From positions 124,001-188,000 of the IMG/VR virus record IMGVR_UViG_3300027710_000011: 64,000 nucleotides of DNA; one strand, given 5' to 3'. Both the position numbers and the translations under genes were made by a program. Below, piece by piece: positions 11,391 to 56,033 of the stretch. The notes under the pieces were generated by a model. That model searched no databases and had not been told where the DNA came from. It saw nothing but the letters and a program-made list of their open reading frames with translations. The number at the start of each line of letters is the position of its first letter. Position 1 is the first letter of the stretch.

Positions 11391-11421
11391 AATGGGAGCT
11401 GTCTTTCGACAGCTCCCAAAT
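11391..11421 (-). terminator. intrinsic terminator
   Basis: GGGAGCTGTC-TTTC-GACAGCTCCC, followed by TTTATGC on the minus strand. Confidence 0.8.
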
Positions 11422-11424
11422 GTT

Positions 11425-12015
11425 TCACTCTTCTTCCTTGATACGGATGAAAGACTTCACAGCCTGTTGCCATTTGCGATCTTCTGGTTGGAAGCTGGAA
11501 ACAACTTTGTTCACCAACATTCCACCGACGATTCGGTACACCTTCCCAGAGTGATTGTGCTTAACACGTGTGTAGGATTTCAAACCGTCTTCGAAATGCG
11601 CAATGATCGTGAGCTGTTGTTGGCTGACAAAATGCTCATGAGCTTTAAAGGCATTTGCAAAGGCGGTTGGTGTGATGGCGTCAACGCGCGGTACGTTTGC
11701 CTCAGGGATGCGACCGTAGCGTTGTTTGTACGCATACATTGCTTCTTCCCGGCTCTTGGTTATAGGAACCACCAGAGCGACACTTGGACCGTGCAGCTTA
11801 TCAACTTGCACTTCAACTTGAAAGTTCGTGTCAGCGTAATCGTTACACATGTCACGGAACCAGTCGGGAGCGGCGTGATGCATCCAGACCAAACGATCCG
11901 CAACGTGTCCGCTACGATCTCGCCCAATGACATTCAAGCCACTGAAGCGAAACTTACCGTTTGGGCAACGGTGGATCTTGACGAACCCTTGTCTTACTTT
12001 CTGTGCTTGATACAT
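11425..12015 (-). CDS. hypothetical protein, distant paralog of 12849-13610
   Basis: 196-aa ORF with GAGG SD; shared motif pattern (see findings). Confidence 0.75.
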   Translation of the reverse strand: MYQAQKVRQGFVKIHRCPNGKFRFSGLNVIGRDRSGHVADRLVWMHHAAPDWFRDMCNDYADTNFQVEVQVDKLHGPSVALVVPITKSREEAMYAYKQRYGRIPEANVPRVDAITPTAFANAFKAHEHFVSQQQLTIIAHFEDGLKSYTRVKHNHSGKVYRIVGGMLVNKVVSSFQPEDRKWQQAVKSFIRIKEEE

Positions 12016-12040
12016 TTGGTCCTCTTAGACCCAATCCTAA

Positions 12041-12229
12041 CTACATCAAAGCCCCTGGAACACAGTCGAACATGTTCCTTGATGTGCTGTAATCTGGATC
12101 AGGTATTAATTGCTCAATCGATGGATCTTTCTTGGACTCATCGACTTGCATTTTGGTTTTGATGATGGCTTCTTGTCGTTGTTGCTTCTTGCTTTTATTG
12201 CAAACTTCTCGACTGGTTTGATGACTCAT
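12041..12229 (-). CDS. small hypothetical protein
   Basis: 62-aa ORF with GAGG SD. Confidence 0.55.
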   Translation of the reverse strand: MSHQTSREVCNKSKKQQRQEAIIKTKMQVDESKKDPSIEQLIPDPDYSTSRNMFDCVPGALM

Positions 12230-12848: not shown

Positions 12849-13610
12849 TTATTCGAACGGCGTGTAGCCGTCAGGATCAGCCAGCATTGCGTTGATCTTG
12901 TCCAGATCAAACAATTGGCGGTGGCGCATCACAACTTCAATGTCGCGATCCAAGATCATGCCGTTGGTACCAGCACGACCCACGTGTTGACGCAAACGGT
13001 CAGCACCGGACAACTCATAGTAGTAACCGTTGCGCATCACAACCAAAGCCGTAAAGGTCTTGGGGAAGATGCGTGCGATGGTGCCGACTTCGCCGTGCTT
13101 GAAGCCACGCGTGTAGAACAAGTGGCACAGCGTGTGATCGTCTTCGACCTTGAGCGATGACACGGAATTGCCGCGCAGCTTGAGCATGCGGGTTTTCCAT
13201 TCAACGACGGCTTGGTTCAAATTGCTGGCCGAAGGACGCACAAAGGCGATGTTGTCGTTCAGCAACGCCTTGACATTGACGCGGATCCAGATGTTCTCCA
13301 ACTCTTCAGGAATCTGAGGAGTCGCCAGCAGTTCTTTGAACCACTGATGACCGTGCTTGTCTGGGAGAAGGACGCGGTTGCGAGGCACAGGCTTTTCACC
13401 GCCAGTCCGACGATCACGACCACCGCCGATGCTCGGCAGCACGAGGCCGTGCATGTGGTGGGAAAGACGACGCTTGTCTTCGCTGTTGCCGCGGCGCACG
13501 TTCTCGATTGTCACCCAGCCTTCGATCTTTTCTTCCACTTGCACAACGGCTGATTTGTGCTCTTCTTGGTCGGCCGGTGTTTCGAGGACGGGTTGTTGTT
13601 GATCGGACAT
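12849..13610 (-). CDS. hypothetical protein
   Basis: GGAGAAACAT-ATG start at 13610 is preferred over TTG 13724; strongly biased codon usage. Confidence 0.8.
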   Translation of the reverse strand: MSDQQQPVLETPADQEEHKSAVVQVEEKIEGWVTIENVRRGNSEDKRRLSHHMHGLVLPSIGGGRDRRTGGEKPVPRNRVLLPDKHGHQWFKELLATPQIPEELENIWIRVNVKALLNDNIAFVRPSASNLNQAVVEWKTRMLKLRGNSVSSLKVEDDHTLCHLFYTRGFKHGEVGTIARIFPKTFTALVVMRNGYYYELSGADRLRQHVGRAGTNGMILDRDIEVVMRHRQLFDLDKINAMLADPDGYTPFE

Positions 13611-13797
13611 ATGTTTCTCCAGACGCAAAACGTCGAGTTGAATGAATACTGAGCTATGACTCGCCCAGCGAGAGTGGCATGATGATACTGCTGTTAGGTT
13701 TATTTTGCCCTTTAAACCTAACAAAAAATAATATCACTAGAGCAGGTTTTACCCTACCCTAGTGAATATTACTTATCGGCTCGAACGCCTAAGCCGT

Positions 13798-14982
13798 TTA
13801 ACCGGCTGTAGCGCTTTGAGCTTCACCGACTTCGATCTCGCTGACGCCCATCACTTCGCGGGCGGCTTCCTTGGAGATGAACAGAGCCAGAGACAGGTGG
13901 CTCTCGTCAGCGATCTTGAAGATCTCGCCGATCGGCTTCGTCCAACCAGTGTAGTCAACACCGGCTTCCAGGCTGGGACCGTTACCGCGGAAGATTTGAA
14001 CGTAGCCAGCGGCGCGATGCACCAGGACCATGTTCTTGTCTGCCAGGATCGGGTCAGCGAAGTGCACGAAGCGATCGCCTTCCAGGTTCGAGAAGCTGGT
14101 GACTGCTTCCACCGGTGTGGAGTTCACGATAGCCGCGATGTAGGCCATGTCCGAACGGGTGTAAGGGAACACCGTGGTCGGAGTAGCGGCTGTGAAGACC
14201 AGGTTGAAGAACTGGATGGATTGCTCCATTGGGCCGGAGTTCTTCAACTGGAAGTTCGTGGCCTGAGCGCGCTCCACATCGTAGTTCTCAGGATAGGCGT
14301 GGTGCAGATGGATGAGGCCCTGACGGACTTTCAACAACTCCATGCCCTTCTGGAACACGTAGGCCTTGGCCTGGTTCGCTGGCGAGACGATCATCGGCTG
14401 GCTCTGTTCTGCCAGATTCAAAGTCACGCTTTCGCGCTTGCCTTCAGCCATGAAGCTGACCTTGTCGCCGATCAGTGTCACGTTCACACCAGGTCCGATC
14501 GGGAAGATCAAGACGCGGACGCCGTCGATCTCTGTGGAACGGGGCTCAGACGTGCGGTACTTGATCGTGAGCGCCGAAGACATGGTCACGTTGGTGACGC
14601 AGCGACCCAAGTCATGAACCTTGTCGAAGAAGCGTTGTTCAGGCGACTGCTCAGCCTCGACGGGTGCCGGGGTTTCAGCAGTTACGCCAGCGTTATCTTC
14701 AACCGAGGCCGAATCGTCGGGCCGTTGGACTTCCGTAGTGTCACCACTATTGGAATCGGCTGGCGCTTCTGCGACAGGAGCGGCGGGGGTTTCAGTTGTT
14801 TCGGCGGAACGAATGTCATCGTTGACGTCCTTCTTGGTTTCAGCCTCGGGAGCCGTAGCCTTGTCTTTCTTGATGTAACGGTACACACCGTAGGCACCAA
14901 GACAGACCAGTGCAATGCCTGCACCGTAGACGCCGATGCGACCGAGACGAGAGATGTTGTTCAGTTGGAAATTCATGACCAC
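13798..14982 (-). CDS. membrane-anchored hypothetical protein
   Basis: N-terminal TM (IGVYGAGIALVCLGAYGVY) followed by RYIKK, an acidic Pro/Ala linker and a globular C-terminal part. Confidence 0.8.
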   Translation of the reverse strand: MVMNFQLNNISRLGRIGVYGAGIALVCLGAYGVYRYIKKDKATAPEAETKKDVNDDIRSAETTETPAAPVAEAPADSNSGDTTEVQRPDDSASVEDNAGVTAETPAPVEAEQSPEQRFFDKVHDLGRCVTNVTMSSALTIKYRTSEPRSTEIDGVRVLIFPIGPGVNVTLIGDKVSFMAEGKRESVTLNLAEQSQPMIVSPANQAKAYVFQKGMELLKVRQGLIHLHHAYPENYDVERAQATNFQLKNSGPMEQSIQFFNLVFTAATPTTVFPYTRSDMAYIAAIVNSTPVEAVTSFSNLEGDRFVHFADPILADKNMVLVHRAAGYVQIFRGNGPSLEAGVDYTGWTKPIGEIFKIADESHLSLALFISKEAAREVMGVSEIEVGEAQSATAG

Positions 14983-15064
14983 TCCTAAAAAACCAACACG
15001 AAAAGACTCGTGGTGGTGAATGTCTCGTGAAGCGGGATTACCCCACGAGTGTTTTCAAATTGGC

Positions 15065-15421
15065 TTAAACAGCCGCTGCTGGATCAGCTTGCGCTGACGA
15101 ACCGGGGAAGAACACTTCCTTAACCTTGACGCTGATGTTCTCGAAGAAACTGCGCACAGGGATCAGGAAGAGCGCGCCGACGGCCAGCAAGCAGAACACG
15201 CAAGCAAACACCTTGCCGAACAGCACAGCAGACAGAGTCGTACCACCAGCAACGACAGCGACGGCCGCAGCGATCACGATGACCACCATGGCGAAGATGA
15301 AGATGCGGTAGAGGGCGTGCATGACGATCTTCATCAAACCCTTGGCAATGCCAAGAATCAAAGCGGTGAAGAAGTCGCCGACAAGATCGGAATACTTGTT
15401 GTTGTCTTGTGTCGTGGACAT
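15065..15421 (-). CDS. small integral membrane protein
   Basis: 2-3 long hydrophobic segments; AGGAG SD. Confidence 0.8.
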   Translation of the reverse strand: MSTTQDNNKYSDLVGDFFTALILGIAKGLMKIVMHALYRIFIFAMVVIVIAAAVAVVAGGTTLSAVLFGKVFACVFCLLAVGALFLIPVRSFFENISVKVKEVFFPGSSAQADPAAAV

Positions 15422-15578
15422 GAAAAACTCCTATTGAATGAAAATGAAGGTTGGGATAAGTAACTCGTAAGGCTTTCCTTTCTAGAAAGTGTAGAGACTC
15501 GAGCATTGATAGCTCAAGCCTCTACACACTGTGTTAAGTGCTTGAAATAATCTAGAATCTAGATTACTTCTGACGCAC

Positions 15579-16211
15579 TTAGGCGGCGGCGGGAGCCGGC
15601 GTGGCGACCACGTCGGACTTCTTGAACCAGGACTTGACCTTGGTCCAAGCAGAGGTGGCCTTGTCAGCGGTGTAGTCGACGGCGGTGTTGATTGCCGGCA
15701 TAGCGGTGCTGAAGAAGAAGTACATGCCGCAGAGGATCAGGCCGTATTCGACAGCGACCATCATCAACGCAGACATGCCCAGGGCACCCATCCAGACGGC
15801 GAAGAAGTTCAGGGCGTAGAAGGTGCTCATGTAGGCGGCGATGTTGATCACCCACTTGGCAATGTTGCGCACATTGAACGACATGCGCAGCGTCCAGGTC
15901 ACGCCTTCTTCGCCCTTGGCGCCGCCAGGAGCAGCTTGCTCGGTCTTGGTGTCGGCAGCAGGGTCGCCCTTGGCGTTGGTTTGCTCAGCGCCGGCGGCGT
16001 TGACGTTTTCGGTGTTGGCGTTGGCGGCGGCGGCGTTTGCTTCTTGAGCGTTCGAGGTCTTGTTCGTGTTCATGGTGGTTTCTTTCTTTAACGATGGAAT
16101 GGAAGGGGACACAGGGGTTCTTGGAGCGGCAGGCCTTTGGACTCTTCGTCTCGGCCTTGGCTCCGGCTCGATAATGTAGTGTACTCCATTATCGATGATG
16201 TGGAGTGCCAT
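15579..16211 (-). CDS. membrane protein (2 TM); possible second start at 16073
   Basis: GGAG SD; Ala/Asn-rich N-terminal half followed by two hydrophobic helices. Confidence 0.8.
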   Translation of the reverse strand: MALHIIDNGVHYIIEPEPRPRRRVQRPAAPRTPVSPSIPSLKKETTMNTNKTSNAQEANAAAANANTENVNAAGAEQTNAKGDPAADTKTEQAAPGGAKGEEGVTWTLRMSFNVRNIAKWVINIAAYMSTFYALNFFAVWMGALGMSALMMVAVEYGLILCGMYFFFSTAMPAINTAVDYTADKATSAWTKVKSWFKKSDVVATPAPAAA

Positions 16212-16223
16212 ATTAGGCTCCGA

Positions 16224-16295
16224 TTAGAGGGGTCTGCGGAAGAACCCAAGCGTCGGAGGCGCACATACGCACACCCTTACTAACTTGGGTTCCAT
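16224..16295 (-). CDS. candidate 23-aa small protein MEPKLVRVCVCAPPTLGFFRRPL
   Basis: AGGAG-TAAC-ATG; the stop sits directly before the SD of the next gene. Confidence 0.4.
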   Translation of the reverse strand: MEPKLVRVCVCAPPTLGFFRRPL

Positions 16296-16327
16296 GTTAC
16301 TCCTGGGAGTGATAGGCTTGTGACTGG

Positions 16328-16606
16328 TTAAGCGTACTGATGACCAGAGCCGAACTTCGACGAAACGTAGTTGATCAGCTTGAAGATCTTGGCAACAGAG
16401 GCGTCGCGAACCAAGTTGTACAGACGAGCAACCTTCTTGTTGAACACCGTGAAGTAAATCAGCACGGCGAAAATGACCCAAGGCACAGCACCAGCGGGCA
16501 TGACGGACAACAAGATGCCGCCGAACAGAGCGAACATGATGCGACGCAATCCAGCGAAGAGGATGACCTCGACGATGAAATGGATGACAGCCTTAAGTGT
16601 GGACAT
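16328..16606 (-). CDS. small integral membrane protein
   Basis: 92 aa, mostly hydrophobic, with a basic C-terminal part. Confidence 0.8.
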   Translation of the reverse strand: MSTLKAVIHFIVEVILFAGLRRIMFALFGGILLSVMPAGAVPWVIFAVLIYFTVFNKKVARLYNLVRDASVAKIFKLINYVSSKFGSGHQYA

Positions 16607-16751
16607 GACAGTACTCTCTAAAAGGTTGGGGCTCGTTAAACGAGCAAGAGGGATTCTCTATCACTCCCAACCATGGATTGCGGAAACTTCGGGTTAATGA
16701 TTGCGTAATCGTAAGGCAAATTCCTTTCAGGTTATGTTGCACAAGACTGCT

Positions 16752-17000
16752 TTAGGCAGCAGCAGCCATCACGGGTTCGACGGCTTCGGCCGCAGCGACA
16801 CCGGCTTCGGCGACTGCCGCACCGCCTTTACCGAACCAACCGGCCACAGTGTTACCGATGCCGCGGAAGAAACCGCCGGTCGCCGACAAGACAGCAGAGG
16901 TCTGTGTGGGCAGGAAGTGGGCGCAACCCAGAGCCACGGCGATCAGAGCGCCGACGGTCAGAGCGATGGCGACGGCGTGCTTCTTGATGAACTTGAACAT
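16752..17000 (-). CDS. small membrane-associated protein
   Basis: GAGGA SD then MFKFIKKH, a hydrophobic helix ending ALGC (possible signal or lipobox-like), amphipathic middle and an Ala-rich tail. Confidence 0.75.
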   Translation of the reverse strand: MFKFIKKHAVAIALTVGALIAVALGCAHFLPTQTSAVLSATGGFFRGIGNTVAGWFGKGGAAVAEAGVAAAEAVEPVMAAAA

Positions 17001-17055
17001 GATGGTATCCTCTTTGGTTGTGGAAAATGATTGAGACCGGGATGATCTCACGTGT

Positions 17056-17072
17056 GTAATATTAGGCTGAGG
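17056..17072 (-). promoter_or_regulatory. putative early promoter (CTCAGCCTAATATTAC)
   Basis: Closest match in the window to the phiKZ early consensus TATATTAC; followed by a 5' hairpin TGAGATC-ATCCC-GGTCTCA. Confidence 0.6.
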
Positions 17073-17165
17073 TGTTTTTCATTCCTAATACAGCACAAAA
17101 GCCAGGTAAGTATTTTACACTCCACCTTAACTCAAACCAGTCATATGGGTCTGAAAAAATCTTCA

Positions 17166-17735
17166 TTATACTTTTTCTATAGCTTTTTCAAAACTCCAAC
17201 CTTTTTTAACAATTCTACTGTAGAGTACGTTGTAAGAAATATTTAAATATTTAGACCATTCTACCAAGGTCTTCGTTACACCGTTATGTGTGTATGTGTG
17301 TTTATTAGAAGGTAGTGCAATTGCTGTTTCTAAATCTAGACCTCTTGATAATCTGTTTTTAATGGTCTGTACCGACAACCCTGATTGTCTGGCAAGTTCT
17401 GACGCAGTTACTTTCACATCAGCTACGGTGTAATAAACGTTATTTCGCCTATTGCTGCTTTGTTCAAGATTTGTAGCCCAACAGCAATTGTCAGGTTCGT
17501 AGTTTCCGTTAGTGTCCTTGCGCTCAATTGAATGTTGATCAGATGGTCGGAACCCCATATCCAAAATAAAAGCTTCATAGCTGTCCATCCAGCGACTACA
17601 AATAGTAATACCGCGCCCTCCGTAATCCGGATACGCTGGATGATTTGGATTTAAACAGCGTTGTTTCATATTTGCCCAAACAGCATAATGGTTATTTACG
17701 GATACATCGTGAAGATGTTTCTCGTGTTGCAACAT
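17166..17735 (-). mobile_element. free-standing HNH homing endonuclease
   Basis: W.NMKQRC.N....Y..YGGRGITIC.RW...F..DMG..P....SIER.D.NGNYEP.NC.WAT..EQ..N, then HTH-like repeats; markedly AT-rich. Confidence 0.9.
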
Positions 17736-17809
17736 TTTTTAACTCCTGGTAATTATATCGAGTTTGTGATATGTTATCTGAAGTTTTTGCAATATAGTTT
17801 TTACAGCAT

Positions 17810-17839
17810 AAAGACAGGGTCCCGTAGGACCCTGTCTAT
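17810..17839. terminator. intrinsic terminator
   Basis: AGACAGGGTCC-CGTA-GGACCCTGTCT. Confidence 0.8.
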
Positions 17840-17852
17840 TACGTGTTTATTA

Positions 17853-18326
17853 CTACGATGAAAAAGCTTGTTTAGCTTCTTCCTTGTCACCACCGCTAGT
17901 TTCGTGGGTTGAAAAAGCAGAGATGAAAAGAACCCAGCGTTTAAAGAAACCGACGTTTGCGACTTTCATCGCTTCCAAGAAGACCATGTTTGCTTCGTAG
18001 CAATCCACCCTCATTCTGACCTTAGCGATTCTTACACGCCCAGTGGTGCGGAGATAATGGTGAACTATTGCTGCTTTCCCGTGAAGGGAATCTGGTTTAA
18101 TCCAGTTACGAAAGAATCGTGGCACCACGGCACCGGGCAAACACCATCCATGCGGGATGTGTACCCAGTACTCACGATCACGGTTACCGACATAGAAGTT
18201 CATGCACCCTCTAGTCACATAGACTGTTTGTCCTTCGCGTTGAGAAGACTTCTCGTCTACTGAGACACGGCTTGGTGCGTGAAACTTCAGGTAAGAAGTC
18301 AATTGACCACCTCGACCTAAAGACAT
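17853..18326 (-). CDS. DUF1353-like protein
   Basis: IP.G.....A.VPRFF...I.P....GKAAIVH.YL...EAN.VFLEAM...VG..KRW. Confidence 0.7.
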   Translation of the reverse strand: MSLGRGGQLTSYLKFHAPSRVSVDEKSSQREGQTVYVTRGCMNFYVGNRDREYWVHIPHGWCLPGAVVPRFFRNWIKPDSLHGKAAIVHHYLRTTGRVRIAKVRMRVDCYEANMVFLEAMKVANVGFFKRWVLFISAFSTHETSGGDKEEAKQAFSS

Positions 18327-18463: not shown

Positions 18464-19825
18464 CTAATCGTTATTCAGATCGATTTCGCGTTTAGTAAAA
18501 ACACTCAAATTACTGGCCGTGATGTGTCGATTAGTTTGGAAACCATTCCCTAGGGTTTGCACGTAGTGATGCGCATGGATCAGCACTCCGTATGTTTCCT
18601 TCACTGAATCTTCTTCCATGAACAAGATCTTCACCGGCATACCTGGGTACAACAGTGTGGGATCAGAGTTCTCCCAAGACATGGAGAGCAAAGCACCGTC
18701 ACGTATGGCGAGCTTTGAATATTCCACGTAAGGGTTTGAAGTGATTTTGTTATCACTGGTCAGGACGTTGTTGTAACCGTTGGGTCGCTTAATGGTCGTG
18801 AACTCATTATTCGTACCACCCCGGCCAGCAAGGGCTTTGTTACCCTCAACCTTGACAAAGCCTTCCATGAATTTGTCACCGTCACCAAAACGAACACCGT
18901 TACCGCTGTTGAGCATCATGCTCTCGGACTTGTTTTCTATTTTGGCTTCACCAGTCACAATGGCAGTGACAGCATCACCGTCTTTCTTGAATGTTCTCTC
19001 AGTACCCGGCATTCGATTCGGAGGAACACGAATCAAAGTCAACGTACGCTGAGCTTTATTGAAATCAACGTTGTTGTAGGGCTGGAAGATGTACCACGTA
19101 TCGTTCAGGAAGTAATACCCAAAGCCTGCGTTATACACGCCACATTTCTGATGGATGTAACCAGGAACGTTCACGAGTCGTGTTCCTTGCGGGATCACGA
19201 TGTGTTCTCTCTTTGTGGTATTGTTAGCAGGAAACATTTCCACACCAGTTGGAATTGCTTTCTGATCAGCATTAACGATCTTGGACTCGGTAGTCATCAC
19301 AGCTTTGATAACTTCTTCAACGGTAGCGTTTCTGAAAACACCACCAAAGCTTCTCATTCTGAATTGATCCACAGATTTCGTGATCAGCTGAAACTCCACA
19401 GTGAACATGTTGGTCAAATCAAGATCGGACTCACTAGGCTGATTATAGGTGTTCCCCGTAACAGCAGGATTCTTCGGGTCGACCATGACGGCAACGTATC
19501 GTTCCGACTGAATAGGACGCGAATCATCACTACCACCACCAACCTCGTTGACCGGGATCTTGTAAAGCGTGATTTCAAGCTTACTCATGTTCGGGTAGAT
19601 CTGGTACGTATAAGCACCACCACCTACTGTCAGAGTAAGGATGATTTCGTCTGTGAAGTTGTTGGTGTAATCACAGACGAAATCAATCGATAGCACCTTG
19701 AATGACTGAATCGTCTTGTCGGGAGTGCAATGGATATCTGCTGACCAAAAATAGCTTGCTGAGCCATTCTTGTTTGCAGCGATAGCCTTGATATCCGCGC
19801 CAAGGGCAGAGTCAAGAATATCCAT
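18464..19825 (-). CDS. virion structural protein (phiKZ gp101-like, baseplate hub-like)
   Basis: 453 aa; C-terminal W.NSDP.LLYPGMPV motif; last gene of the virion block by synteny. Confidence 0.6.
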   Translation of the reverse strand: MDILDSALGADIKAIAANKNGSASYFWSADIHCTPDKTIQSFKVLSIDFVCDYTNNFTDEIILTLTVGGGAYTYQIYPNMSKLEITLYKIPVNEVGGGSDDSRPIQSERYVAVMVDPKNPAVTGNTYNQPSESDLDLTNMFTVEFQLITKSVDQFRMRSFGGVFRNATVEEVIKAVMTTESKIVNADQKAIPTGVEMFPANNTTKREHIVIPQGTRLVNVPGYIHQKCGVYNAGFGYYFLNDTWYIFQPYNNVDFNKAQRTLTLIRVPPNRMPGTERTFKKDGDAVTAIVTGEAKIENKSESMMLNSGNGVRFGDGDKFMEGFVKVEGNKALAGRGGTNNEFTTIKRPNGYNNVLTSDNKITSNPYVEYSKLAIRDGALLSMSWENSDPTLLYPGMPVKILFMEEDSVKETYGVLIHAHHYVQTLGNGFQTNRHITASNLSVFTKREIDLNND

Positions 19826-37253: not shown

Positions 37254-37967
37254 TTACGTCTTATTTACAGCTTCTTCTATTGACAACTTATCCCGATTGA
37301 TTCTTTGATGAAGTTTCCAATACGGGATCCCTGATGATTTTGATATCTCAGAGAGACTCATCTGTTGTCCATTGAATAAGAAAGTTTTTGGTTGTGTGAG
37401 TGGGCCAAAAACCTTATCTAGTGGCCAGTTGTTATTTAATCGATTTTCAAGTGTAGCTACTTCAATCCCGATTAAATTGGACCATTCAGAAAGCGTAAGC
37501 GTCTTATCATCAAAAGTGTAAGTGCTTGGTTTGCGAATTTCAGGATTTAAAGCTTCGCTGACGCTAGCGCCTTTACTTAATCTTGTATAAATTGTCTTAG
37601 CAGAAACATTCAACTTTCTGCTCATTTCAGCTACAGTTCCTTTATTTCCATCGTGTTCCAGTACGACATTTGTTCTAAGATTGTTAGCTTGCTCCATAGG
37701 AGTTGCCCAACGACAATTACCAGGTTCGTAATTCCCATTCATGTCGGGGAAGCGATCAATTGAATATTCAGGGCCAGGCTTAGAACCCATATCGGTATAG
37801 AAGTTTTCGAAAGAATTCCTCCATCGATCACAAATCGTAATACCACGACCACCGTAGTTGTGATAAGCAGGATTATTTTGATTAAAACAACGAGCGATCA
37901 TGCTACACCAGCTTTGGTACTCGCTAGTCTTGGACATTCCGTGCGTGCTATTTATACCAGTTACCAT
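37254..37967 (-). mobile_element. free-standing HNH homing endonuclease
   Basis: HGMS...EY.SW.SM..RC.N....Y.NYGGRGITIC.RW..SFENF..DMG.KP...SIDR..D.NGNYEPGNCRWAT..EQANN plus 3 HTH-like repeats; AT-rich; GGAGG SD before ATG 37967. Confidence 0.9.
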
Positions 37968-38110
37968 AATGCCATCCTCCAATTCTTGACACAAAGGTGA
38001 TATGTGGTTATAAAACCGTAGACTTCGTTCTGCATGAGCGCGCAAGTCTTCGTTAATTGAGACGTCATAAATGGAGGGATCACTCCCTCCATTTATGCTA
38101 TCTAGTTTGT

Positions 38111-55139: not shown

Positions 55140-56033
55140 ATGTCAAAGAACTTTCAGGTAGGCAACACTGATCCCTACATCTCCAAAATTCAACAAGCAA
55201 TCAACGAAAAGTTGGGCCCAGTTGACGCCAGCAAAATGCCTGGTAAAGCCTATCTGGTAAGCGATGGTGGTTTTGGTCCCAAGACTCGTGATGCCTTGAT
55301 GGCATTTCAAAAGTCAGTTGGTCTGAGCGCATCAGGCACGTACGATGCTGCAACTGCTGCGGTACTTGATCCATACATTGACCAGCGGTTCTTGTCTGAC
55401 GAAGACTTCTCTGGTGCTTCTCAAACGCTGCAAATTGAAGAAGCACTCATTCGCGCTGTGACCGAAGTCGAAGGTCGTGGCCGTGGTTTCTTGCCCGATG
55501 GGCGGCCTTTGATTCTGTTTGAACGCCATGTGTTCCGTCAGCAATTGCTCAAGCTAATGAAGGCGTCGACGGCAACGGCAGTAAGCGTTGCCAAGATTCT
55601 GGGCGTGGGCGTTCCTGTGACTGGTCCGAACATCGCGTTGCTGGACGATACGATGATGTCTTTGCATGGCGACATCTATTCCGAAAAGCTTGGTGGTTAT
55701 ATCGGTGGTGCATCCGAATATAAGCGTTTGGAAAAAGCTGCTCAATTCAGCCTGAGTGCTGCTCGTTCTTCCGCTAGCTGGGGTATGTTCCAGATCATGG
55801 GTTACCACTTCGCTACGCTGGGCTACGGCTCAGTTGAAGAAATGGTGAAGCTGGCATGCGTGAGCGAAACATCTCACCTGAAGGACTTCTGCAAGTTTGT
55901 TCAAGCAGATCAAAAACTCATCACGTCTTTGCGCGGTAAAGACTATCTGACTTTTGCACGGACTTACAACGGTCCTGGCCAACAAGGTTACGATGAGAAG
56001 ATCCGTACCGCCTATCAGAAGTTCAAGAACTAA
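55140..56033 (+). CDS. modular endolysin: peptidoglycan-binding domain plus DUF3380 N-acetylmuramidase
   Basis: DGGFGPKTRDALMAFQ...L.ASG; AV.EVE..G.GFL.DGRP.ILFERH.F; SASWGMFQIMG; FAR.YNGP. Confidence 0.92.
   Translation: MSKNFQVGNTDPYISKIQQAINEKLGPVDASKMPGKAYLVSDGGFGPKTRDALMAFQKSVGLSASGTYDAATAAVLDPYIDQRFLSDEDFSGASQTLQIEEALIRAVTEVEGRGRGFLPDGRPLILFERHVFRQQLLKLMKASTATAVSVAKILGVGVPVTGPNIALLDDTMMSLHGDIYSEKLGGYIGGASEYKRLEKAAQFSLSAARSSASWGMFQIMGYHFATLGYGSVEEMVKLACVSETSHLKDFCKFVQADQKLITSLRGKDYLTFARTYNGPGQQGYDEKIRTAYQKFKN

What the first reader, a model, noticed from the sequence alone, without database searches (positions are those of the whole stretch)
12849..17072. Candidate early operon of five membrane proteins behind the best early-promoter match
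Seen: TAATATTAC at 17056-17064 precedes a run of five TM-containing ORFs (82, 92, 210, 118, 394 aa) and one soluble ORF. All have strongly biased, C-ending codons and no family I can recognise. Known: phiKZ-like phages transcribe early genes with the injected virion RNAP while the genome sits in a membrane-bound early vesicle. Inference: this is a dedicated early membrane-remodelling module (early-vesicle maturation, mRNA export or superinfection exclusion).
Basis: partly seen in the sequence, partly recalled or inferred. Interest (0 to 1): 0.7.

Follow-up and report, generated by a model that had tools for sequence, protein, structure and literature searches.

The report
Fast-evolving early membrane-protein cassette, jumbo phage

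Summary
The ORFs are real. Five minus-strand genes (A 82, B 92, C 210, D 118, E 394 aa) carry predicted TM helices. All have correct-frame coding signal, strong C-ending codon bias and no known family or fold. The cited promoter is wrong. TAATATTAC occurs once in the 276.8-kb genome, scores 0 bits against the genome's own promoter motif, and is not conserved in relatives. The genome's motif is TCTA..TTTCAGnnACATATCAC. It has 26 sites, all on the gene strand, directly upstream of chimallin, PhuZ and an RNAP beta subunit. A strong terminator (13734-13765) ends the unit after E, so soluble F is a separate, well-conserved gene. Against a sister genome the flanking genes are 89-97% identical in protein, but A-E only 35-58%. 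A-E is therefore a hypervariable accessory island, absent from other chimalliviruses. The spanins and the endolysin lie elsewhere, so it is not the lysis cassette. The best reading is an early envelope-interface module, such as superinfection exclusion or defence interplay. No RNA data were listed, so the timing is inferred.

The parts
17812..17837 (-). Intrinsic terminator closing the upstream virion-gene block, just after the DUF1353 gene (17853-18326)
   Evidence: RNA fold of 17780-17855 gives -28.9 kcal/mol, z -7.3. The hairpin is conserved in L002 and L003.
17756..17797 (-). P_HNH: early-type promoter motif, core CATATCAC at 17766-17773
   Evidence: PWM score 27.3 bits. It is orthologous to the promoter of the 174-178-aa RNA_pol_A_CTD-like gene of L002/L003.
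17166..17735 (-). HNH homing-endonuclease gene (189 aa, GC 0.39). It stands where relatives carry the alpha-CTD-like gene.
   Evidence: phrog_3377, E 5.9e-59. No match to the 174-aa relative gene in the own genome. Atypical codon score of 0.003.
17130..17171 (-). P_A: conserved early-type promoter variant, TTTTTTCAGACC-CATATGAC-TGGTTTGAGTTAAGG, core 17140-17147. This is the probable promoter of A-B-C.
   Evidence: PWM 19.4 bits, rank 19 genome-wide. The same element is aligned in L002 and L003, where a terminator hairpin precedes it. It is present in L032.
17056..17064 (-). It lies in the presumed 5' UTR of A and pairs with an upstream GTATTAGG in the predicted fold.
   Evidence: PWM 0.0 bits. 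Not conserved. Unique in the genome. Fold.
16752..17000 (-). Gene A, 82 aa: basic N-terminus, one TM (residues 9-27), Gly-rich GFF..IG..AGWF segment, ...PAAA C-terminus
   Evidence: The ATG start and its RBS are conserved. The lipobox-like ALGC is invariant in 3 orthologues, but its Cys is Ala in L032.
16607..16751 (-). Structured A-B intergenic region containing the GAAAGGAAtttGCCTTACGATTAC element (CCTTACGA at 16709-16716) and a nested hairpin followed by a T-run
   Evidence: 75% column identity across 3 phages. Consensus fold has 2 compensatory pairs. The element is repeated before D.
16328..16606 (-). Gene B, 92 aa: two TM helices and a basic C-terminal tail
   Evidence: It is the most divergent gene: 35% identity to L002, dN/dS 0.77.
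15579..16211 (-). Gene C, 210 aa: Arg/Pro-rich N-terminus, low-complexity linker, hydrophobic C-half, conserved TWTLR and AWTKVKxWFKKS motifs, ...PAPAAA end. Has an internal SD+ATG at Met47.
   Evidence: Duplicated in L002 as 174 + 161 aa. Highest C3 but one in the genome.
15521..15562 (-). P_D: second early-type promoter variant, core CTTAACAC at 15531-15538, with a doubled TCTAGA upstream element
   Evidence: PWM 15.3 bits. The region shows 82% column identity in 3 phages. The L032 orthologue has the canonical CCATATCAC core.
15065..15421 (-). Gene D, 118 aa: amphipathic N-helix plus two strong TM helices, KVKEVF motif, ...DPAAAV end
   Evidence: Only 3 clusters in 5.8 billion proteins.
14992..15064 (-). 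Long hairpin followed by UUUUUU between D and E; a possible attenuator
   Evidence: -29.1 kcal/mol, z -4.8. Also found by the terminator-like scan.
13798..14982 (-). Gene E, 394 aa: N-terminal TM anchor, about 75-aa acidic disordered linker, about 270-aa two-lobed alpha/beta domain of unrecognised fold. Predicted N-out/C-in.
   Evidence: AlphaFold2 pLDDT is about 85 over residues 111-380. No fold match. Only 7 representatives in 1.84 billion proteins. K+R counts are 0-2 before the TM and 3-5 after it in 5 of the 6 orthologues with a detectable TM; L032 gives 0 before and 1 after.
13734..13765 (-). T_E: strong intrinsic terminator (13-bp stem plus U-run) 33 nt after the E stop. This is the downstream boundary of the hypervariable island.
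   Evidence: -35 kcal/mol, z -7.4. High nucleotide identity to L002 resumes at 13779.
12849..13610 (-). Gene F, 253 aa, soluble. A separate and much better conserved gene with its own conserved upstream element; not part of the membrane cassette.
   Evidence: 91/89/61% identity to orthologues, against 70/52/43% for E. 12 clusters. Upstream element conserved in 6 lineages.

Best explanation
Window 13734-17171 (minus strand) is a self-contained accessory cassette of an uncultivated chimallivirus (phiKZ-like nucleus-forming jumbo phage).

Shown:
- It has five genuine genes for small or anchored inner-membrane proteins (A-E).
- A strong terminator insulates it from the late virion block upstream.
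- Two conserved variants of the genome's own early-type promoter precede it (P_A before A-B-C, P_D before D-E).
- A strong terminator closes it after E.
- Its codon bias equals that of the most abundant proteins (major head protein, chimallin, PhuZ).
- It diverges about 10-fold faster at non-synonymous sites than its flanks, while gene order, topology and short motifs are kept.

Inferred:
- The injected virion RNAP transcribes the genes early.
- The products insert into the host inner membrane, with the tails of B, C and D and the large domain of E facing the cytoplasm.
- They act at the phage-host or phage-phage interface.

Most likely role: exclusion of, or competition with, superinfecting related jumbo phages at the membrane site of genome entry. 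Interplay with envelope-associated host immunity is the close alternative. An arms race would explain the rapid turnover. The architecture part I hold at about 0.8, early timing at about 0.65, and the exclusion/interface function at about 0.35.
For: Coding: (dN/dS below 1 in all five genes).

TM content and topology.

Promoter class:
- 19 exact CATATCAC copies, 18 of them on the gene strand.
- 26 PWM sites, all on the minus strand, 24 of them intergenic.
- Strong sites lie directly upstream of chimallin (phrog_4795), PhuZ (phrog_4733) and RNAP beta (phrog_3295).
- The architecture (T-rich upstream element plus extended -10-like core) and the site number match the phiKZ early promoters described in PMC8244752.
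- This fits the statement that only the early motif is bioinformatically detectable in these phages (PMC7598289).
- phiKZ gene 54 (chimallin) is used as an early marker.

P_A and P_D are conserved at orthologous positions in L002, L003 and L032.

Terminators.

Island pattern:
- 85.5-87% nucleotide identity in the flanks against 69-71% in patches inside.
- Protein identity 89-97% in the flanks against 35-58% in A-E.
- dN 0.31-0.60 in A-E against 0.01-0.06 in the flanks.

Codon bias shared with the major head protein, chimallin, PhuZ and tail sheath.

Accessory status:
- Family sizes of 3-7 clusters.
- Absent from GenBank phages.
- The syntenic slot holds other genes in LucasX and FLC9, and five unrelated small TM ORFs in RP12.

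The lysis genes are accounted for elsewhere.
Against: There are no expression data. No RNA run was listed, so early timing rests on promoter analogy.

P_A and P_D are the weaker, core-mismatched members of the motif set (19.4 and 15.3 bits against 37-47). P_A shares a TGAGTTAA box with only one other site in this genome, so these promoters could form a different temporal subclass.

No sequence or fold similarity links any of the five proteins to a known exclusion protein.

Topology comes from a Kyte-Doolittle scan and charge counts, not from a dedicated predictor.

Elevated dS (1.0-1.8, near saturation) means part of the divergence could reflect older allelic exchange rather than continuous diversifying selection.

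Five genes is more than known Sie systems need.
Confidence: 0.4

Rival explanations
1. A-E are phage-made integral membrane components of the early-infection (EPI) vesicle or of the vesicle-to-nucleus hand-off. E's cytoplasmic domain would be tethered to the vesicle surface, for example to recruit ribosomes, chimallin or export factors.
For: Early-type promoters and abundance-type codon bias. The predicted cytoplasm-facing, linker-tethered domain of E. The literature says specific early proteins associate with the EPI vesicle, and that how the genome and mRNAs cross it is unknown. Hypervariability could reflect escape from immune sensors that watch this stage, such as Juk and Avs5.
Against: The cassette is not conserved outside one small clade. 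It is absent from the syntenic slot of LucasX and FLC9, and replaced by unrelated genes in RP12. tblastn of E (and of F) finds no hit in 50,697 phage records. The EPI vesicle forms at injection, before any new phage protein exists. None of the papers consulted uses the word 'transmembrane' or names a phage-encoded integral membrane protein of the vesicle.
Confidence: 0.15
2. The cassette is an early host-takeover or counter-defence module. Its small membrane proteins would inhibit host envelope functions (transport, proton-motive force, division, secretion) or neutralise membrane-acting abortive-infection effectors.
For: The same evidence for early timing, membrane location and rapid evolution. 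The E-F slot also swaps cargo between lineages: a secreted 110-aa protein in L002, L003 and L032, a different 104-aa protein in L030, and nothing here or in L005. That is typical of host-interaction loci.
Against: No similarity to any known anti-defence or defence protein. The only PADLOC hit is a 29-residue TM match to ZorA at E 0.0015. With the present data this reading cannot be told apart from the exclusion reading.
Confidence: 0.2
3. The cassette contributes to lysis or its timing (holin, antiholin or lysis-inhibition components).
For: B (2 TM plus basic tail) and D (2-3 TM) have holin-like size and shape. C has a conserved internal SD+ATG, reminiscent of dual-start holin genes. No TM gene sits beside the endolysin.
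Against: An Rz/Rz1-type spanin pair with a holin-like gene next to it lies about 110 kb away, at genome 29701-30896. The endolysin is at window 55140-56033. The cassette sits behind early-type promoters, not late-type ones. In phiKZ the lysis genes form one cassette with the endolysin. E is not coiled-coil like an i-spanin.
Confidence: 0.08
4. The ORFs are non-functional or mis-called, and the region is junk or non-coding.
For: No homologues outside a handful of metagenomic contigs. Longer antisense ORFs exist on the plus strand.
Against: Frame-specific codon signal. Conserved order, lengths, starts and RBSs in at least 7 lineages. dN/dS of 0.23-0.77. Conserved motifs.
Confidence: 0.02

Closest known systems
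phiKZ early (virion-RNAP) promoters and early operons
   Same: A recurring intergenic motif with a T-rich upstream part and an AT-rich, roughly 9-nt, -10-like core. A few dozen copies per genome, co-oriented with the genes, upstream of chimallin, PhuZ and RNAP genes.
   Different: The cassette's own promoters are degenerate variants. Transcription has not been measured.
T4 Imm / Sp and T5 Llp superinfection-exclusion proteins (comparison from my own knowledge of these systems)
   Same: Small early-expressed envelope proteins of virulent phages, with one or two TM helices or a lipid anchor, that protect the infected cell from further injection. Such genes are typically variable accessory genes.
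   Different: No sequence similarity: no PHROG or Pfam hit. There are five genes instead of one or two. E has a large domain predicted to be cytoplasmic. The lipobox of A is not universally conserved. No phenotype is known.
phiKZ lysis cassette gp141-gp144 (PMC12894885)
   Same: A cluster of small membrane proteins that includes an anchored protein and a possible lipoprotein.
   Different: This phage has its spanin pair and its endolysin elsewhere. The cassette shows no coiled-coil i-spanin, no embedded or adjacent o-spanin, and no endolysin, and it has early-type promoters.
Ralstonia phage RP12 ORF230-ORF226 (positional analogue)
   Same: The same genomic slot, between the phrog_3245 virion gene and thymidylate kinase, starts with five small ORFs that carry 1-3 predicted TM helices.
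   Different: No detectable homology. RP12 has no E-like large anchored protein. The RP12 ORFs are themselves uncharacterised.

Membership tests
Jumbo-phage early (vRNAP) promoter class of this genome | A recurrent conserved motif in intergenic DNA, co-oriented with genes, upstream of hallmark early genes | tested here: met
   26 PWM sites, all on the minus strand, 24 intergenic. Sites lie before chimallin, PhuZ and RNAP beta.
   0.0 bits. CCTTAATAC in L002 and deleted in L003.
Jumbo-phage early (vRNAP) promoter class of this genome | P_A (17140-17147) and P_D (15531-15538) match the motif and are conserved | tested here: met
   19.4 and 15.3 bits, ranks 19 and 21 of 553,462 positions. Aligned in L002 and L003. 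The L032 P_D orthologue has the canonical core. Both are weaker than the 37-47-bit sites.
Jumbo-phage early (vRNAP) promoter class of this genome | Transcription starts there within minutes of infection, independently of new protein synthesis | not testable with these tools
   No RNA run was listed for this metagenomic phage.
Holin/spanin/endolysin lysis cassette | An i-spanin (TM plus periplasmic coiled coil) immediately followed by, or overlapping, an o-spanin lipoprotein; usually next to the holin and endolysin | tested here: not met
   The spanin pair is at genome 30051-30896 (phrog_456, phrog_7584) and the endolysin at window 55140-56033. E is alpha/beta globular. The gene after E in relatives has a signal peptide without a lipobox Cys.
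Known superinfection-exclusion proteins (T4 Imm/Sp, T5 Llp/Cor type) | Sequence membership in the families | tested here: not met
   No PHROG hit at E <= 0.01 and no Pfam hit above cut-off. No PADLOC or NCBIfam hit.
Known superinfection-exclusion proteins (T4 Imm/Sp, T5 Llp/Cor type) | Small early envelope protein; for the Llp/Cor type, a lipobox Cys | tested here: inconclusive
   Size, TM content and promoter class fit. The A-L-G-C of gene A is invariant in 3 orthologues, but the Cys is Ala in L032.
Known superinfection-exclusion proteins (T4 Imm/Sp, T5 Llp/Cor type) | Expression blocks infection by the same or related phages | not testable with these tools
   Needs a cultivated relative and its host.
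Chimalliviridae core machinery (EPI vesicle / nucleus) | Conserved across the family | tested here: not met
   tblastn of E (and of F) finds no hit in 50,697 phage records. Only 7 representatives of E in 1.84 billion proteins. Absent from the syntenic slot of LucasX, FLC9 and RP12.

The most novel reading that the evidence does not exclude
A-E are the first phage-encoded integral membrane proteins of the chimallivirus early-infection vesicle or nucleus hand-off. Made in the first minutes, they would insert into the vesicle-forming inner membrane. E would display a new-fold domain on a long acidic tether, to organise translation, chimallin nucleation or genome transfer. The cassette would be hypervariable because host sensors of this stage (Juk- or Avs5-like) select for escape. 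The unrelated TM-ORF cluster in the same slot of RP12 would then be its functional analogue.
Probability: 0.12. Interest if true: 0.85.

Novelty: new variant of a known kind. Interest (0 to 1): 0.45.

Why it matters
Nucleus-forming jumbo phages begin infection inside a membrane vesicle. None of the papers consulted here names a phage-encoded membrane protein for that stage. How these phages exclude or compete with co-infecting relatives at the envelope is also poorly understood.

This analysis provides three things:
- a sharply bounded, early-promoter-driven, rapidly diversifying membrane-protein cassette, together with a positional analogue in a cultivated phage (RP12), as a concrete candidate locus for such functions;
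- the clade's own early-promoter motif, which can be used to annotate early genes in related metagenomic genomes;
- a demonstration that transferring the phiKZ consensus to distant relatives gives a misleading promoter call.

Tried and rejected
- **Nucleotide search.** Megablast of the region against GenBank phages gave no match.
- **Protein searches.** tblastn of E and F against phages gave none. An IMG/VR scan with F gave none.
- **Family libraries.** Pfam, PHROGs, PADLOC and NCBIfam gave only sub-threshold noise: Claudin_2, BAT2_N, US29, ZorA TM, SecB.
- **PDB profile searches** for E and F gave only low-complexity or weak hits.
- **Structure of E.** The second, from 8 sequences, was usable.
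- **Fold searches on the usable model found nothing:**
  - Foldseek against PDB: best E 0.08, TM at most 0.15.
  - AFDB clusters: TM at most 0.16.
  - BFVD: two hits reach E below 0.001 (best 4.8e-4), but with TM at most 0.14.
  - VIA wide: best Z 4.6, below the tool's noise level.
  - ESM Atlas, by shape and by features: nothing (for F).
- **RNA evidence.** Only DNA runs from subsurface and drinking-water metagenomes hold the sequence, and no RNA run was listed. Read laying was not used because only contigs of DNA runs were available.
- **Rfam:** no family. **tRNA:** none.
- **Lipoprotein reading of A:** weakened by the Cys-to-Ala change in L032.
- **AATATCAC on the plus strand at 13730** as an antisense promoter: rejected, because it is the descending arm of terminator T_E.
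- **The 408-aa plus-strand ORF** opposite E: rejected by the codon model.
- **The lysis-cassette reading:** rejected.
- **Complex prediction** was not run. I make no binding claim, and the alignments (3-8 sequences) are too shallow.

Full report
**Identity of the genome.** The window is bases 124001-188000 of a 276,772-bp IMG/VR virus record with 49.7% GC. It is a phiKZ-like nucleus-forming jumbo phage.
- The virion gene at 18464-19825 (phrog_3245) has its best relatives in Burkholderia FLC9 (41%), Xanthomonas LucasX and Ralstonia RP12/RP31.
- The genome encodes chimallin, PhuZ and a phage RNAP beta subunit, a phiKZ-type major head protein and a tail sheath.
- The only public runs holding the sequence are DNA runs from subsurface and drinking-water metagenomes. 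No RNA run was listed.

**The ORFs.**
- A codon model trained on the genome's long genes gives each of them +0.20 to +0.34 bits per codon over the best alternative frame (genome median 0.21).
- The longer antisense ORFs score negative. This includes a 408-aa ORF opposite E that a naive longest-ORF caller would pick.
- A hydropathy scan finds one TM in A, two in B, a hydrophobic C-half in C, two strong TMs plus an amphipathic helix in D, one N-terminal anchor in E, and none in F.
- GC3 of A-E is 0.67-0.76, ranks 5-28 of 268 genes. The top of that ranking holds the major head protein (rank 1), chimallin, PhuZ and tail sheath. In this genome the C-ending bias therefore tracks abundance, which suggests that A-E are made in quantity.

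**The promoter.**
- It occurs once in the genome, and TATATTAC only twice.
- A k-mer enrichment on upstream regions instead recovered CATATCAC: 19 copies, 18 on the gene strand, mostly intergenic, embedded in tcta..tt..TTTCAGnnACATATCAC(t).
- A PWM from 17 sites finds 26 positions above 4 bits. All are on the minus strand and 24 are intergenic.
- The strong sites (37-47 bits) lie directly upstream of chimallin, PhuZ, RNAP beta, a homing endonuclease and many ORFans.

The motif's build, site number and target genes match what is described for phiKZ early promoters (PMC8244752). They also fit the general statement that the early motif differs from phage to phage and is the one class that can be found bioinformatically (PMC7598289). 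Chimallin (phiKZ gene 54) is a standard early marker. I therefore read this as the early (virion RNAP) promoter class. That is an inference, not a measurement.

It scores 0.0 bits. It reads CCTTAATAC in L002 and is deleted in L003. In the predicted fold it pairs with an upstream complement.
- Eighty-three nucleotides upstream lies a 19.4-bit site (core CATATGAC, 17140-17147). It is conserved, with its TTTCAGAC upstream box and a TGAGTTAA downstream box, in L002, L003 and L032, and usually follows a terminator directly.
- A second site (15.3 bits, core 15531-15538) lies before D, in an intergenic region with 82% column identity across three phages. Its L032 orthologue has the canonical CCATATCAC.
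- A third site (27.3 bits, 17766-17773) drives the HNH gene. It is orthologous to the promoter of a 174-178-aa RNA_pol_A_CTD-like gene that relatives carry there and this genome lacks.

**Boundaries.**
- A strong terminator follows the DUF1353 gene (-28.9 kcal/mol, z -7.3).
- A long hairpin plus U-run lies between D and E (-29.1 kcal/mol, z -4.8).
- A 13-bp-stem terminator with a U-run follows E (-35 kcal/mol, z -7.4).
- The A-B and B-C spacers hold conserved hairpins with a few compensatory pairs.
- F has its own upstream element, conserved in six lineages.

The unit is therefore P_A-A-B-C-P_D-D-E-T_E, not a six-gene operon.

**Relatives and evolution.** E has only 7 representatives among 1.84 billion proteins, D has 3 clusters and F has 12. 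The contigs that carry them keep the same order in at least seven lineages: virion genes, DUF1353, (alpha-CTD-like gene), A, B, C, D, E, (variable gene), F..., thymidylate kinase.

Against the sister genome L002:

| Measure | Flanking genes | A-E |
|---|---|---|
| Nucleotide identity | 85.5-87% | 69-71%, in patches |
| Protein identity | 89-97% | 35-58% |
| dN | 0.01-0.06 | 0.31-0.60 |
| dN/dS | 0.03-0.15 | 0.23-0.77 |

The island's edges coincide with P_A and T_E. The slot between E and F also swaps cargo between lineages. C is duplicated in L002 and looks like a fusion of the two copies here.

The same genomic slot holds almost nothing in LucasX. It holds a 90-aa ORF with one predicted TM (gp327), followed by non-TM ORFs, in FLC9, and five unrelated small TM ORFs in RP12. 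A-E is thus an accessory, fast-turnover locus, not core machinery.

**Protein features.**
- A has a basic N-terminus, one TM and an ALGC lipobox-like motif. The motif is invariant in three orthologues, but its Cys is Ala in L032, so lipidation is doubtful.
- B, C and D end in basic amphipathic tails (KVKEVF; AWTKVKxWFKKS).
- A, C and D end in ...PAAA-type tails.
- E has more K+R after its TM than before it in five of the six orthologues with a detectable TM, while L032 gives only 0 before and 1 after. This predicts a cytoplasmic C-terminal domain on a roughly 75-residue acidic tether.
- The 8-sequence AlphaFold2 model is confident (about 85) over residues 111-380. It matches nothing in PDB, AFDB clusters, BFVD or the ESM Atlas.

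**Excluding lysis.** A textbook spanin pair lies at genome 30051-30896: a TM plus coiled-coil i-spanin, followed by an LSGC lipoprotein, both hitting Rz-like PHROGs. A holin-like gene sits next to it. The endolysin is at window 55140-56033. In phiKZ these functions form one cassette. The A-E cassette is about 110 kb from the spanins and 38 kb from the endolysin.

**Interpretation.**
- Shown: real membrane-protein genes; conserved early-type promoter variants; terminator-bounded; abundance-type codon bias; extreme local divergence with retained architecture; clade-restricted.
- Inferred: early, abundant insertion into the inner membrane and an interface function.

I rank superinfection exclusion or competition between related jumbo phages first, with interplay with envelope-associated immunity as its close alternative. 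Such loci are typically early, membrane-bound, accessory and fast-evolving, and chimalliviruses enter through a membrane vesicle where a cytoplasm-facing anchored protein could act.

The EPI-vesicle-maturation or mRNA-export reading remains possible but is weakened by the lack of family-wide conservation. It is also weakened by the vesicle forming before any new phage protein exists.

The finding is a solid candidate locus with an unproven function.

Noticed in passing
window 17166-17735 (-) and window 37254-37994 (-): There are two paralogous HNH homing-endonuclease genes (phrog_3377, E 6e-59 and 7e-65), each directly behind an early-type promoter. The first stands where relatives L002, L003 and L032 carry a 174-178-aa RNA_pol_A_CTD-like gene, which this genome lacks. 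It has low GC (0.39) and atypical codon usage.
   Followed up: partly
G000:C1:29701-30896 (outside the window; L044-L046): Probable lysis genes: an i-spanin (170 aa, TM plus coiled coil), an o-spanin lipoprotein (104 aa, lipobox LSGC) and a 104-aa single-TM holin-like protein. The two spanins hit Rz-like PHROGs.
   Followed up: partly
window 55140-56033 (+): Endolysin (PG_binding_1 plus muramidase-type domain; phrog_1224, E 1.6e-78) with no TM gene beside it. The lysis genes are therefore dispersed, unlike the single phiKZ cassette gp141-144.
   Followed up: partly
window 16709-16739 (-) and 15465-15495 (-): A local repeated element, GAAAGGAAnnnGCCTTACGAkTwAC, occurs only twice in the genome: in the 5' regions of B and of D. 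It is conserved at both places in L002, L003 and L032. It may be a cassette-specific RNA or DNA regulatory site.
   Followed up: partly
window 16073-16211 (-), gene C: A conserved in-frame Shine-Dalgarno plus ATG at Met47 is present in all four orthologues and could give a second, shorter isoform. L002 carries C as two tandem paralogues (174 and 161 aa), and the gene here looks like a fusion of the two.
   Followed up: partly
C-termini of A (16752), C (15579), D (15065): Three of the five proteins end in ...PAAA, ...PAPAAA or ...DPAAAV, and the tails are conserved in orthologues. The matching DNA, GC(N)GC(N)GCCTAA, is also conserved. I could not tell whether this is a degron or sorting tag, or a signal at the nucleotide level.
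   Followed up: no
L002:11182-11514, L003:10222-10560, L032:7191-7529; absent between window 13611 and 13797: The slot between E and F is variable. It holds a 110-aa secreted protein (cleavable signal peptide, KPP motif, two Cys) in three lineages, an unrelated 104-aa protein in L030, and nothing in this genome or L005.
   Followed up: partly
window 12849-13735 (-): F (253 aa, soluble) is far better conserved than the cassette (89-91% to close relatives, 12 clusters). It has its own upstream element (..TCATGCCACTCTCACTGGGCGAGTCATAGC..), conserved in six lineages and unlike the early motif. No family or fold was found for it.
   Followed up: partly
whole genome (G000): All 26 promoter-like sites are on the minus strand. 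Many are fused to the preceding terminator in a recurring terminator-CTTTATGC-GTCTA-T-rich-TTTCAG-core module. A subclass with a degenerate core but a strong CTGTATCCTAGAATATTTCAGA upstream half occurs at 107380, 80239, P_A and P_D; two of these also carry a TGAGTTAA box. The subclass may be a separate temporal class.
   Followed up: partly
L049 (Ralstonia phage RP12) 8504-10269: In RP12, ORF230-ORF226 occupy the same slot between the phrog_3245 virion gene and thymidylate kinase. They are five small ORFs with 1-3 predicted TM helices each and no detectable homology to A-E. This is a possible functional analogue in a cultivated phage.
   Followed up: partly
window 13762-14988 (+), 16340-16621 (+), 16701-17030 (+), 11392-12162 (+): Long plus-strand ORFs opposite real minus-strand genes, a consequence of the high GC3. 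Gene callers that prefer the longest ORF pick them: the public gene call for L002 chose the antisense ORF opposite B.
   Followed up: yes
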